Source of the DNA: Podarcis muralis
Lineage: Eukaryota
Direction of reading: 5' to 3'
NCBI RefSeq assembly: GCF_964188315.1
Contig: NC_135656.1
Location: 107,756,001-107,820,000 of the forward strand
Length of the DNA stretch: 64,000 nucleotides
The notes beneath the pieces were generated by a model. It was given only the letters and a program-made list of their open reading frames with translations. It was not told the DNA's origin and made no database searches. Shown here in pieces: positions 5,901-6,972 of this stretch (positions are counted from its first letter, which is position 1; every line of letters starts with the position of its first letter). The position numbers and the translations under genes were made by a program.

Positions 5901-6972
5901 GCTCCCAGGTCAGGATCCCATCATTGACTTCAGCACTAGGAAGCATAAGGTATGCCAGGAATGATTCTTCATTAGCCATGACACCAGTAAGAATGGGTTT
6001 GCCTTGAATGCCTCTCTCCAGGAGCTTTCTGGGCTCATCAGTGAGAAATTCCCCATCTGCTGTTATTGATCTGATACCACAGAGTTCAGAAAGTGCATGG
6101 CTCTCAATTTCCTTCCCCTGTAGGCAGCTGACCATTGCACTGTGGTTAGTTTTAGGACACCCCATGAGCTGACTCAACATCGCTGATTCTCTTTCGGCAT
6201 CTTCAGGACTCCTCCAAATCCGGCGGGCAGTGGGAACTCCACTATGAAGCACACCATGGGCAACAAGGGGTTGGCTTGCCGGTGAAAGCAGGTGTAAACC
6301 AACTGAGACTGCTCCAGAACCGAGGCCAAGGAGAGTCAACCGAGCTGGATCCCCGCCAAAGACAGCTGCGTTCTCACTCACCCACTTCAGAGCCAGATGT
6401 TGGTCCCACAATGCAACATTTCCTGGGGCAGCTGGAGGCAAGTACAGGTAACCTAACATTCCTCCGCGGTAATTCATGGAGGCCACAATGACATTCTCTG
6501 TAGCAGCTAATAAGGCCCCATTTAAGACATCTGCTGAGGCTGTGTTCATGCTAAAACCCCCACCATAGATCCATAGGAGGATGGGCACTGGTGTGACTGG
6601 CCGTGGATGGGGCACCCAGATGTTGAGGAACAGGCAGTCCTCTGAAAGTGGTGTGTTTGGAGTCCATATGGGTCGATCAGGGAAGGAATCGTTATTAAAC
6701 TGAAGGCAAGAGTTGCCAAAGGTGGTGGCCTCCAAGACCTGGCTCCACGGCTGATGTGGAACCGGCTTCTGGAAACGCAGTTTGCCCATGGGGGGCTCAG
6801 CATAGGGGATGCCCAGGTAGGCGGTCACAGAGCCAGGGCCAGCCGGGAGTCTTTTGCCTCTAATAGGACCGCTGCTGGTGACCACCACAGTATCATCTTC
6901 AGAGGCAGAGCTGGAAGCCAGGAAGAGGAGGAGGAGGCAGAAGAAGGAGGGTGAAGTCCGGAAACAAGGCAT
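2991..6972 (-). CDS. Gene A: secreted cholinesterase-like protein, catalytic Ser->Gly (pseudoenzyme), 569 aa; join(6972..5522, 4536..4373, 3085..2991)
   Basis: Signal peptide MPCFR...SSSA; motifs YLGIPYAEPP, SEDCLFLNIW, YGGGF, GNVALWDQ, HGAEIPY; elbow GLGSG (GGT at 6319..6321). Donor GG|GTAAGG, acceptor ctacag|G, donor A|GTGAGT, acceptor ttcgcag|GG; frame preserved. The ORF-track N-terminal extension is intronic. Confidence 0.9.
3641..4084 (+). mobile_element. solo LTR in intron 3 of gene A
   Basis: TGTCAGG...CCTGACA termini, 5-bp TSD GTAAC (3636..3640, 4085..4089), AATAAA near 4014; absent from the matching site in C (~22778). Confidence 0.85.
4940..5406. mobile_element. old LTR-like insert in intron 2, shared by A and C
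   Basis: TG...CA ends and an aataaacc...aaagac segment also seen reversed at ~60770-60815. Missing from B, whose intron 2 is only 229 bp. TSD not clean. Confidence 0.45.
5068..5327. mobile_element. Tc1/mariner-type MITE nested in intron 2 of A
   Basis: TA-flanked, degraded cagtcatacc...ggtacaagtg ends; empty site aaccata-ta-tcctaaag in C (~23765). Confidence 0.7.

What the first reader, a model, noticed from the sequence alone, without database searches (positions are those of the whole stretch)
5990..6600. Active-site pocket of the dead paralogs is rewired at several positions, not just broken
Seen by alignment to D, using human AChE-equivalent numbering: E202->L (GAA>CTC/TTA), S203->G, A204->S/E, Y133->L (DVLNG vs DMYNG), G126->N, Q228->H (LHSG/FHSG vs LQSG) and G335->E/D next to the retained catalytic Glu (NEE/NED vs DEG). 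Most of these changes are shared by A-C and cluster at the gorge floor. Inference: a new binding chemistry. Removing E202 and Y133 makes the floor more hydrophobic, while His228, His447, Glu334 and Glu/Asp335 could form a polar or metal-binding cluster. The metal idea is speculative.
Basis: inference. Interest (0 to 1): 0.7.

Follow-up and report, generated by a model that had tools for sequence, protein, structure and literature searches.

The report
Remodelled dead cholinesterase-like genes in lizard
Three neighbouring wall-lizard genes encode secreted cholinesterase-shaped proteins that have lost the catalytic serine and had their whole active-site core rebuilt in one evolutionary burst, and are now kept by selection, so they probably bind something rather than cleave it; what they bind is unknown and the proposed metal site is untested.

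Summary
The window is Podarcis muralis. It carries five tandem, intact three-exon cholinesterase-like genes on the minus strand. A, B and C match RefSeq models exactly.

They are shared with orthologues in Lacerta agilis, Zootoca and two other Podarcis species. I also found L130A, G172A, F222V, A225G, D333N, two gained cysteines and a new glycosylation sequon at the gorge rim.

The genes are not pseudogenes: pairwise dN/dS within the clade is 0.21-0.48, with every interval below 1.

Changes fixed on the clade's stem are enriched in a published list of residues within 9 Å of Ser203 (9/43 against 34/415, p=0.012). The live sister clades have 1/43 each.

In the catalytic core, stem dN/dS is about 1.1. 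It is 0.23 on the live branches and 0.37 within the dead clade. That is a burst followed by renewed constraint.

Caveats:
- Position 202 varies freely in this squamate family.
- Triad loss recurs at least eight times in the family.
- Pocket sites are not more conserved than the rest within the clade.
- A plain 1-D window test shows no clustering.
- No model coordinates were available, so the metal idea stays untested.

Expression was not shown.

The parts
5522..6972 (-). Gene A, large first coding exon (residues 1-484). It holds the signal peptide and nearly all of the cholinesterase fold.
   Evidence: ORF. GT donor after ...AGC GG. The assembled model is 100% identical to RefSeq XP_077781289 (P0128). 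Pfam COesterase E=6e-117.
4373..4536 (-). Gene A, second coding exon. It carries the last conserved Cys, C525.
   Evidence: tblastn of P0001. AG/GT splice sites and an open frame.
2991..3085 (-). Gene A, last coding exon. It encodes a hydrophilic tail with the gained Cys545 (3066-3068) and the stop codon.
6313..6327 (-). Former nucleophile elbow. It reads G-L-G-S-G in A where gene D has G-E-S-A-G. This covers E202L, S203G and A204S.
   Evidence: Leu202 is kept through the synonymous pair CTC/TTA between subtypes.
6523..6564 (-). Oxyanion-hole loop and following segment, residues 137-150. GGG is kept; Y124-position Ser, G126N, L130A and Y133L are changed.
   Evidence: Model confidence is lower here (pLDDT 78-82).
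6241..6264 (-). Strand after the elbow helix, residues 237-244. F222V, A225G and Q228H are changed; Ser229 is kept.
   Evidence: DSSP assigns a strand at 239-243. Gln228 lies within 9 Å of Ser203 in human AChE (PMC4395452).
5965..5973 (-). Acid loop. It reads N-E-E in A and N-E-D in B and C, where D has D-E-G. Glu334 is kept and the neighbouring acid moves from position 333 to 335.
5644..5646 (-). Retained His447 codon.
6664..6666 (-). Retained Trp86 codon (choline-binding Trp). Gene D has Phe here and clade F has Leu.
6079..6081 (-). Gained Cys298 in the shortened acyl-pocket loop. It is invariant in the dead clade and absent from 110 homologues.
6685..6693 (-). Gained N-D-S glycosylation sequon at the position of human AChE Asp74, on the gorge rim.
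   Evidence: The sequon is read from sequence only; glycosylation was not shown.
13456..14906 (-). Gene B large exon, E-type (GLGEG). Its other exons are 13063-13226 and 11686-11780.
   Evidence: 100% identical to XP_077781288.
23972..25422 (-). Gene C large exon, S-type (GLGSG). Its other exons are 23056-23219 and 22115-22209.
   Evidence: 100% identical to XP_077781290.
40722..42193 (-). Gene D large exon, the live comparator (GESAG, triad intact, W86F). Its other exons are 39753-39919 and 38059-38126.
   Evidence: 96.5% identical to a Podarcis raffonei protein.
56866..58358 (-). Gene E large exon, a more distant paralogue (GHSAG, full-length acyl loop). Its other exons are 54329-54474 and 53756-53829.

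Best explanation
Genes A, B and C belong to a lacertid-specific clade of secreted, catalytically dead cholinesterase-fold proteins. The clade arose by duplication of a live GESAG gene (the sister clades D and F).

On the stem lineage the nucleophile was lost (S203G). In the same episode the catalytic core was rebuilt: the elbow, the oxyanion loop, the Y133 segment, the strand carrying Gln228 and the acid loop. Two cysteines and a rim glycosylation sequon were gained.

Since then the new states have been held by purifying selection as strong as in the live paralogues.

Shown: intact genes, loss of the nucleophile, location and timing of the changes, and selection.

Inferred: the proteins act by binding a ligand stoichiometrically, as a scavenger, carrier or decoy. 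They would use a modified gorge that still has Trp86, the three oxyanion glycines and the His447-Glu334 pair, and they would not hydrolyse the ligand. The two subtypes (Ser204/Arg236 against Glu204/Trp236) may differ in ligand.
For: Gene integrity:
- All three genes have intact three-exon coding sequences identical to RefSeq models.
- A signal-peptide-like N-terminus, three conserved disulfide pairs and a hydrophilic tail are present.
- The AF2 model has pLDDT 84.6 and TM 0.83-0.89 to human AChE and BChE.

Age and monophyly:
- The dead clade is monophyletic (support 100), with the longest stem in the lacertid group at 0.23.
- It is present in five species, and both subtypes are older than the Podarcis/Zootoca split.

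Selection:
- Pairwise dN/dS is 0.21-0.48, with all CIs below 1.
- Whole-exon stem dN/dS is 0.69 against 0.33 in the crown.
- In the core, the stem is 1.1, the crown 0.37 and the live branches 0.23; P(stem > live) = 0.99.
- Ala172 is kept across all four Ala codons, and Leu202 is kept across CTC/TTA.

Location of the changes:
- Stem-fixed changes fall in the 9 Å shell of Ser203 at 9/43 against 34/415 elsewhere (p=0.012). Clades D and F have 1/43 each.
- Core region: 12 of 43 dead-diagnostic sites against 4 of 63 for D plus F (p=0.003).
- Other Ser-less lineages keep G126, Y133 and D333, and all but P0062 (Q228L) keep Q228.
Against: - No ligand, no expression data and no 3-D measurement are in hand.
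- Stem dN/dS of about 1 in the core is what simple release from catalytic constraint predicts.
- Pocket positions inside the clade are not more conserved than the rest (7/24 against 76/435 variable). Positions 122, 124, 204, 229, 236, 295, 335 and 338 still vary.
- Purifying selection on the core may reflect fold stability only.
- The total number of conserved-column violations (10-13) is at the top of the family range (median 5, maximum 12) but not far outside it.
- My first residue list was written after I had seen part of the data. The published list was used as a check on it.
Confidence: 0.55

Rival explanations
1. Passive erosion. Once Ser203 was lost, residues that served catalysis were free to drift, and the shared changes are inherited debris. 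The proteins' present role would use the outer surface, as in neuroligins or the thyroglobulin ChEL domain, or be purely structural. The gorge would be irrelevant.
For: - Core stem dN/dS is about 1.
- Enrichment at catalytic positions is what relaxation predicts.
- There is no extra conservation of pocket sites within the clade.
- Triad loss is common in this family, with at least 8 changes of the Ser203 state.
Against: - Core dN/dS returned to 0.37 (CI 0.21-0.59) in the crown.
- Trp86, His447, Glu334, Glu450 and the GGG motif survived the same stem.
- Other Ser-less lineages did not lose G126, Y133 or D333, and only one of seven (P0062) changed Q228.
- The acid moved from 333 to 335 rather than vanishing.
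- Cys298 was gained in the pocket loop and is invariant.
Confidence: 0.3
2. Metal site. His228, His447, Glu334 and Asp/Glu335, perhaps with Cys298, coordinate Zn or Cu.
For: - Gln228, His447 and Glu334 each lie within 9 Å of the Ser203 hydroxyl in human AChE (PMC4395452).
- The new His, the new acid and the new Cys are invariant or conservative in the clade.
Against: - No distance or geometry could be measured, because no coordinates are returned.
- Residue 335 is not in the 9 Å shell.
- His447 and Glu334 already pair with each other.
- Cys298 may instead pair with Cys545.
- There is no precedent for this in the family.
Confidence: 0.05
3. Non-functional genes on their way to decay.
For: The catalytic serine is lost. 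No RNA evidence was obtained here.
Against: - At least nine intact genes exist in five species.
- dN/dS is 0.21-0.48 with CIs below 1.
- Splice sites are intact.
Confidence: 0.05
4. Residual catalysis with a shifted nucleophile (Ser204) in the S-type proteins A and C.
For: The elbow reads G-L-G-S-G, with His447 and Glu334 retained.
Against: - Ser204 is not flanked by the small-x-Ser-x-small pattern: Leu sits at position -2.
- The E-type has Glu at 204.
- Ser204 replaces an oxyanion-hole residue.
Confidence: 0.03

Closest known systems
Vertebrate butyrylcholinesterase and acetylcholinesterase
   Same: - Same fold: Foldseek TM 0.83-0.89, 38-43% identity; phmmer E down to 5e-125.
- The large-exon gene structure with the ...RSG|NP junction (the match to cholinesterase genes is from my own knowledge).
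- The three disulfides, Trp86, the GGG motif, Glu334 and His447 are retained.
   Different: - No nucleophile.
- The elbow, oxyanion loop, Tyr133, Gln228 and Asp333 are replaced.
- A 10-residue deletion removes most of the acyl loop and the Trp286 region. D and F share this deletion.
- There is no tetramerisation (T) peptide; the tail is short, hydrophilic and carries a Cys.
Non-catalytic cholinesterase-like proteins (neuroligins, thyroglobulin ChEL domain, gliotactin, neurotactin)
   Same: A cholinesterase fold with the catalytic serine replaced, kept by selection and working by binding. That the replacement is Gly in neuroligins is from my own knowledge; I did not test it here.
   Different: - Those proteins are ancient and are membrane-anchored or fused to other domains. 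They use surface patches to bind protein partners.
- These genes are young (within Lacertidae) and are stand-alone secreted proteins.
- The lineage-specific changes concentrate inside the former active site.
Other triad-deficient lineages of the squamate 'cholinesterase-like' expansion
   Same: - Same family and the same secreted architecture.
- Examples are S203N in Pogona, Elgaria, Sceloporus, Anolis and Gekko; S203G in Thamnophis; and H447Y with G121M in several lizards.
- Loss of triad residues is independent in each.
   Different: They keep G126, Y133 and D333, and all but P0062 (Q228L) keep Q228. None has the gained Cys298/Cys545 pair at those alignment columns (110 homologues). The lacertid clade is the most deeply remodelled.
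Stoichiometric scavenging by esterases (plasma BChE as a bioscavenger; amplified aphid E4/FE4 esterases)
   Same: The proposed mode of action: a soluble esterase-fold protein that sequesters a small ligand. This is from my own knowledge and is offered as an analogy only.
   Different: Those proteins retain the serine and bind covalently or hydrolyse slowly. Here any binding must be non-covalent.

Membership tests
Carboxylesterase type B / COesterase superfamily (PF00135) | Significant match to the family profile over the whole domain | tested here: met
   E=6.4e-117 over residues 43-500 of the ORF.
Carboxylesterase type B / COesterase superfamily (PF00135) | Cholinesterase-type alpha/beta hydrolase fold | tested here: met
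   AF2 model with pLDDT 84.6. TM 0.83-0.89 to human AChE and BChE structures.
Active cholinesterase (AChE/BChE) | Catalytic triad Ser203-Glu334-His447 | tested here: not met
   Ser203 is Gly in A, B, C and all orthologues. Glu334 and His447 are kept.
Active cholinesterase (AChE/BChE) | Nucleophile elbow G-E-S-A-G and oxyanion hole Gly121/Gly122/Ala204 | tested here: not met
   The elbow reads GLGSG or GLGEG. GGG is kept, but Ala204 is Ser or Glu.
Active cholinesterase (AChE/BChE) | Choline-binding Trp86 and the Glu202-Tyr133 hydrogen-bond pair | tested here: inconclusive
   Trp86 is kept. Glu202 and Tyr133 are both Leu. The pairing in human AChE is described in PMC4395452.
Active cholinesterase (AChE/BChE) | Acyl-pocket loop (Phe295/Phe297) and peripheral-site Trp286 | tested here: not met
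   A 10-residue deletion relative to gene E and human AChE, shared with D and F.
Active cholinesterase (AChE/BChE) | C-terminal T (tetramerisation) or H (GPI) peptide | tested here: not met
   The tail after Cys525 is short and hydrophilic, with no hydrophobic end. No dedicated predictor was run.
Selectively maintained pseudoenzyme (non-catalytic cholinesterase-like protein) | Catalytic residue lost, but the open reading frame is kept under purifying selection across species | tested here: met
   dN/dS is 0.21-0.48 with CIs below 1. Intact genes are found in five species.
Selectively maintained pseudoenzyme (non-catalytic cholinesterase-like protein) | Expressed as RNA and protein | not testable with these tools
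   No listed run is on record as RNA.
Cholinesterase-like adhesion molecules (neuroligin type) | Transmembrane segment and cytoplasmic tail after the esterase domain | tested here: not met
   The protein ends 44 residues after the last conserved Cys, with a hydrophilic tail.
Metalloprotein with a His/Glu(/Cys) site | Three or more ligand side chains within coordination distance | not testable with these tools
   The structure tool returns no coordinates. The only constraint is a coarse bound from the 9 Å shell list.

The most novel reading that the evidence does not exclude
Lacertid lizards evolved, within the last few tens of millions of years, a new secreted binding protein from a live esterase. 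They would have done so by re-engineering the active-site gorge: a new His, a relocated acid, a new pocket Cys paired or unpaired with a tail Cys, a rim glycan, and two subtypes with different charge at positions 204 and 236. The protein would serve as a specific carrier, decoy or metal- or ligand-dependent sensor, for example for a dietary or venom anticholinesterase or for a semiochemical.
Probability: 0.3. Interest if true: 0.65.

Novelty: new variant of a known kind. Interest (0 to 1): 0.45.

Why it matters
Pseudoenzymes derived from cholinesterases are known mainly from ancient adhesion proteins, where the steps of conversion are lost in time. Here the live parent-like genes (D, and F just outside the window) sit next to the dead copies. 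The conversion is recent enough to place on a single branch, and two dead subtypes have persisted in several species.

That makes this a tractable natural case of how an enzyme pocket is repurposed or abandoned after catalytic death.

It also flags a large squamate-specific cholinesterase-like expansion with repeated triad loss. I found no mention of it in the four full-text searches aimed at it. The expansion could confound the use of 'cholinesterase activity' as a pesticide biomarker in lizards.

Tried and rejected
1. Measuring His/Glu distances. The structure tool gives confidence and secondary structure only, and no coordinates appear in /data.

2. RNA evidence. No listed run is on record as RNA.

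3. Ancestral reconstruction of the stem node. iqtree2 on this machine refuses it, and I did not attempt it another way. I used clade-diagnostic sites and distance decomposition instead.

4. Plain 1-D sliding-window clustering of the 43 diagnostic sites. It is not significant for windows of 15-50 residues (p 0.30-0.93) and marginal at 100 residues (p=0.024).

5. Multi-nucleotide codon changes as a sign of pocket-specific selection. They are equally common outside the pocket (7/13 against 15/30, p=0.54).

6. Extra conservation of pocket sites within the clade. Not found.

7. Literature. Four searches for the squamate expansion or lacertid cholinesterase-like genes found nothing relevant. One search for the role of Gln228 returned only unrelated hits.

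8. Spliced models. They were joined only inside scripts, to compare with database proteins. The identical database protein P0128 was used for folding.

9. The large representative-protein search was not used, because the claim does not rest on the absence of relatives.

Full report
**What is in the window.** The minus strand carries five large cholinesterase-like ORFs, which I call A to E:
- A: 5518-7020
- B: 13452-15011
- C: 23968-25515
- D: 40718-42316
- E: 56862-58358

Each matches Pfam COesterase, with E values from 1e-117 to 1e-137. Each is most similar to solved butyryl- and acetylcholinesterases. An uninterrupted 1370-residue retroelement ORF lies between C and D.

Each ORF ends at a GT donor. 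Two short downstream exons follow, with AG/GT borders and open frames. This gives intact three-exon coding sequences of 568-570 residues for all five genes.

The models for A, B and C are 100% identical to Podarcis muralis RefSeq proteins XP_077781289, XP_077781288 and XP_077781290. The window is therefore from the common wall lizard. The joined models were built only inside scripts. For folding I used the identical database protein P0128.

**Check of the observation.** I took human AChE numbering from the alignment to a human AChE variant structure.
- G126N (GGC to AAC)
- Y133L (TAC to TTA)
- E202L (GAA to CTC in A and C, TTA in B)
- S203G (AGT to GGT)
- A204S in A and C, A204E in B
- Q228H (CAG to CAT)
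- G335E in A, G335D in B and C, beside a retained Glu334

His447, Glu450, Trp86 and the three oxyanion-loop glycines are retained.

The stated range 5990-6600 misses codons 333-335 (5965-5973) and His447 (5644-5646).

Changes at the positions of Tyr72, Asp74, Tyr124, Phe295/Arg296, Phe338 and Val408 also belong to it.

**How unusual the changes are.**
- In 110 squamate homologues, G126 and F222 are invariant. G172 is 99% conserved, and A225 and Q228 are 97%. S203 and D333 are 93%. The dead-clade states occur at 0-4% at these columns.
- Position 202 is not conserved in this family. It is His in 56% of members, and also Gln, Asn, Glu, Val and Leu. E202L is unremarkable by itself.
- The dead proteins violate 10-13 of 163 highly conserved columns. 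The family median is 5 and the maximum 12. The number of violations is high but not unheard of. The location of the violations is what stands out.

**Family context.** The best 120 homologues are all squamate, plus two turtle proteins, annotated as 'cholinesterase-like'.
- A tree of 125 sequences needs at least eight changes of the Ser203 state and two of the His447 state. Triad loss is therefore recurrent in this expansion.
- The other Ser-less lineages usually change Ala204 as well. They keep G126, Y133 and D333, and all but one (P0062, Q228L) keep Q228.
- The lacertid clade is thus more deeply altered than any other dead lineage sampled.

**Origin of the dead clade.**
- It includes genes from P. 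muralis, P. lilfordi, P. raffonei, Lacerta agilis and Zootoca vivipara.
- There are two subtypes. S-type reads GLGSG (A, C and one gene each in Lacerta and Zootoca). E-type reads GLGEG (B, one Zootoca gene, and P. lilfordi and P. raffonei genes). Both subtypes occur in Zootoca and in Podarcis.
- The clade is monophyletic (support 100) and has the longest stem in its neighbourhood, 0.23 changes per site.
- It is sister to two live GESAG clades of lacertids. One is D. The other I call F; it lies just downstream of the dead genes in Lacerta and Zootoca.

**Are they pseudogenes?** No.
- Pairwise Nei-Gojobori dN/dS among six dead genes is 0.21-0.48. Every bootstrap interval is below 1. The live genes are in the same range, 0.32-0.47.
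- Ala172 is encoded by all four Ala codons across the clade. Leu202 is encoded by both CTC and TTA.

**When and where the change happened.** I decomposed the distances on the dead/D/F three-way split.
- Whole exon: stem dN/dS is 0.69 (CI 0.48-1.03) and the dead crown is 0.33 (0.24-0.44).
- Catalytic core (residues 105-265), by branch:

| Branch | dN/dS | 95% CI |
|---|---|---|
| Stem of the dead clade | 1.1 | 0.4-5.7 |
| Live D and F branches | 0.23 | 0.12-0.38 |
| Dead crown | 0.37 | 0.21-0.59 |

- The probability that the stem exceeds the live branches is 0.99.
- In the C-terminal half the three values are similar: 0.50, 0.48 and 0.30.
- Of 43 sites fixed on the dead stem, 12 lie in the core. 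For D plus F it is 4 of 63 (p=0.003).

**Proximity to the active site.** No model coordinates were available, so I used a published list of the 44 human AChE residues within 9 Å of the Ser203 hydroxyl (PMC4395452).
- Dead-stem changes hit 9 of 43 mapped shell positions against 34 of 415 elsewhere (p=0.012).
- D and F each hit 1 of 43.
- Adding that paper's peripheral-site list gives 11 of 48 against 32 of 410 (p=0.0024).
- My earlier list, written from memory, gave 8 of 24 against 35 of 457 (p=0.0005). It was written after I had seen part of the data.
- Gln228 is inside the shell. Residues 126, 130, 333 and 335 are not.

- A raw 1-D sliding-window test does not show clustering (p 0.30-0.93 for 15-50 residues). 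The test is insensitive, though, for a pocket assembled from separate segments.
- Within the dead clade, pocket positions vary at least as much as other positions (7/24 against 76/435). Positions 122, 124, 204, 229, 236, 295, 335 and 338 all vary.
- Codons needing two or three nucleotide changes are no more frequent in the pocket than elsewhere.
- A stem dN/dS near 1 in the core fits release from catalytic constraint as well as it fits adaptation.
- The 'more hydrophobic floor' claim holds for positions 202 and 133. I124S, G126N, I74N and A204S/E add polar or charged groups.

**Evidence for more than erosion.**
- Constraint on the rebuilt core returned in the crown.
- Trp86, His447, Glu334, Glu450 and the GGG motif came through the same branch unchanged.
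- The acid next to Glu334 moved from position 333 to 335 rather than disappearing.
- Two cysteines were gained and are invariant in all dead genes and absent from 110 homologues: Cys298 in the shortened acyl loop and Cys545 in the tail.
- An N-D-S sequon was created at the Asp74 position on the gorge rim.
- The two subtypes differ stably across species at positions 204 (Ser or Glu) and 236 (Arg or Trp), both in the 9 Å shell.

**Structure.** The AF2 model of protein A has mean pLDDT 84.6. It matches human AChE and BChE with TM 0.83-0.89, so the fold is kept. Confidence dips at three places:
- the rebuilt oxyanion/Tyr133 segment (78-82)
- the shortened acyl loop (59)
- the tail (below 50)

The metal-cluster idea, gorge openness and a possible Cys298-Cys545 link could not be examined.

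**Expression.** Not shown. No run holding the exon is on record as RNA.

**Verdict.** These are selectively maintained, secreted pseudoenzymes whose catalytic core was rebuilt in one episode. Whether the rebuilt pocket binds a new ligand is plausible but unproven, and the metal site is speculative. Four targeted full-text searches found nothing on this gene family.

The scan's own first-stage notes on this same window had already flagged the clade, the extra Cys and a possible chimeric origin of gene C.

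Noticed in passing
window 27259-31371 (-): An uninterrupted 1370-residue ORF with reverse transcriptase, RNase H and integrase domains. It is a Ty3/gypsy-type retroelement sitting between genes C and D. I observed it only and did nothing further with it.
   Followed up: partly
window 40722-42193 (-), gene D: The 'live' comparator keeps GESAG and the triad. It has Phe at the Trp86 position and Thr/Met at 337/338, and it shares the 10-residue acyl-loop deletion. It is unlikely to be a choline esterase in the strict sense.
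   Followed up: partly
window 56866-58358 (-), gene E: The elbow reads GHSAG, as in most of the squamate family, and Gly448 is Asp. A possible extra 5' coding exon matches at about 61252-61329.
   Followed up: no
L001 19404-20927 and L002 20118-21632: In Lacerta agilis and Zootoca a further live GESAG gene (clade F) lies just downstream of the dead genes. The P. muralis copy should lie just beyond the left edge of the window.
   Followed up: partly
family-wide (proteins P0007-P0112): The squamate cholinesterase-like expansion shows repeated loss of triad residues: S203N, S203D, S203G, S203C, and H447Y together with G121M. The clade nearest to the lacertid D/F/dead group is the G121M group, in which many lizard members have H447Y.
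   Followed up: partly
window 6220-6222 (-), gene A residue 251: The Trp236 position is Arg in A and in the S-type genes of Lacerta and Zootoca, but Trp in C. This fits the first-stage note that C may be a chimera of B-like and A-like parts.
   Followed up: no
L002 841-2412 (Zootoca E-type gene): This copy also has G122A and Ser124Gly in the oxyanion loop (GGAFGMN). The loop is therefore still changing in at least one lineage.
   Followed up: no
window 15639-16499, 45140-45673, 50506-51060, 61917-62369 (-): Four ORFs of 150-286 residues with no Pfam match. They are probably chance ORFs or repeat-derived.
   Followed up: partly
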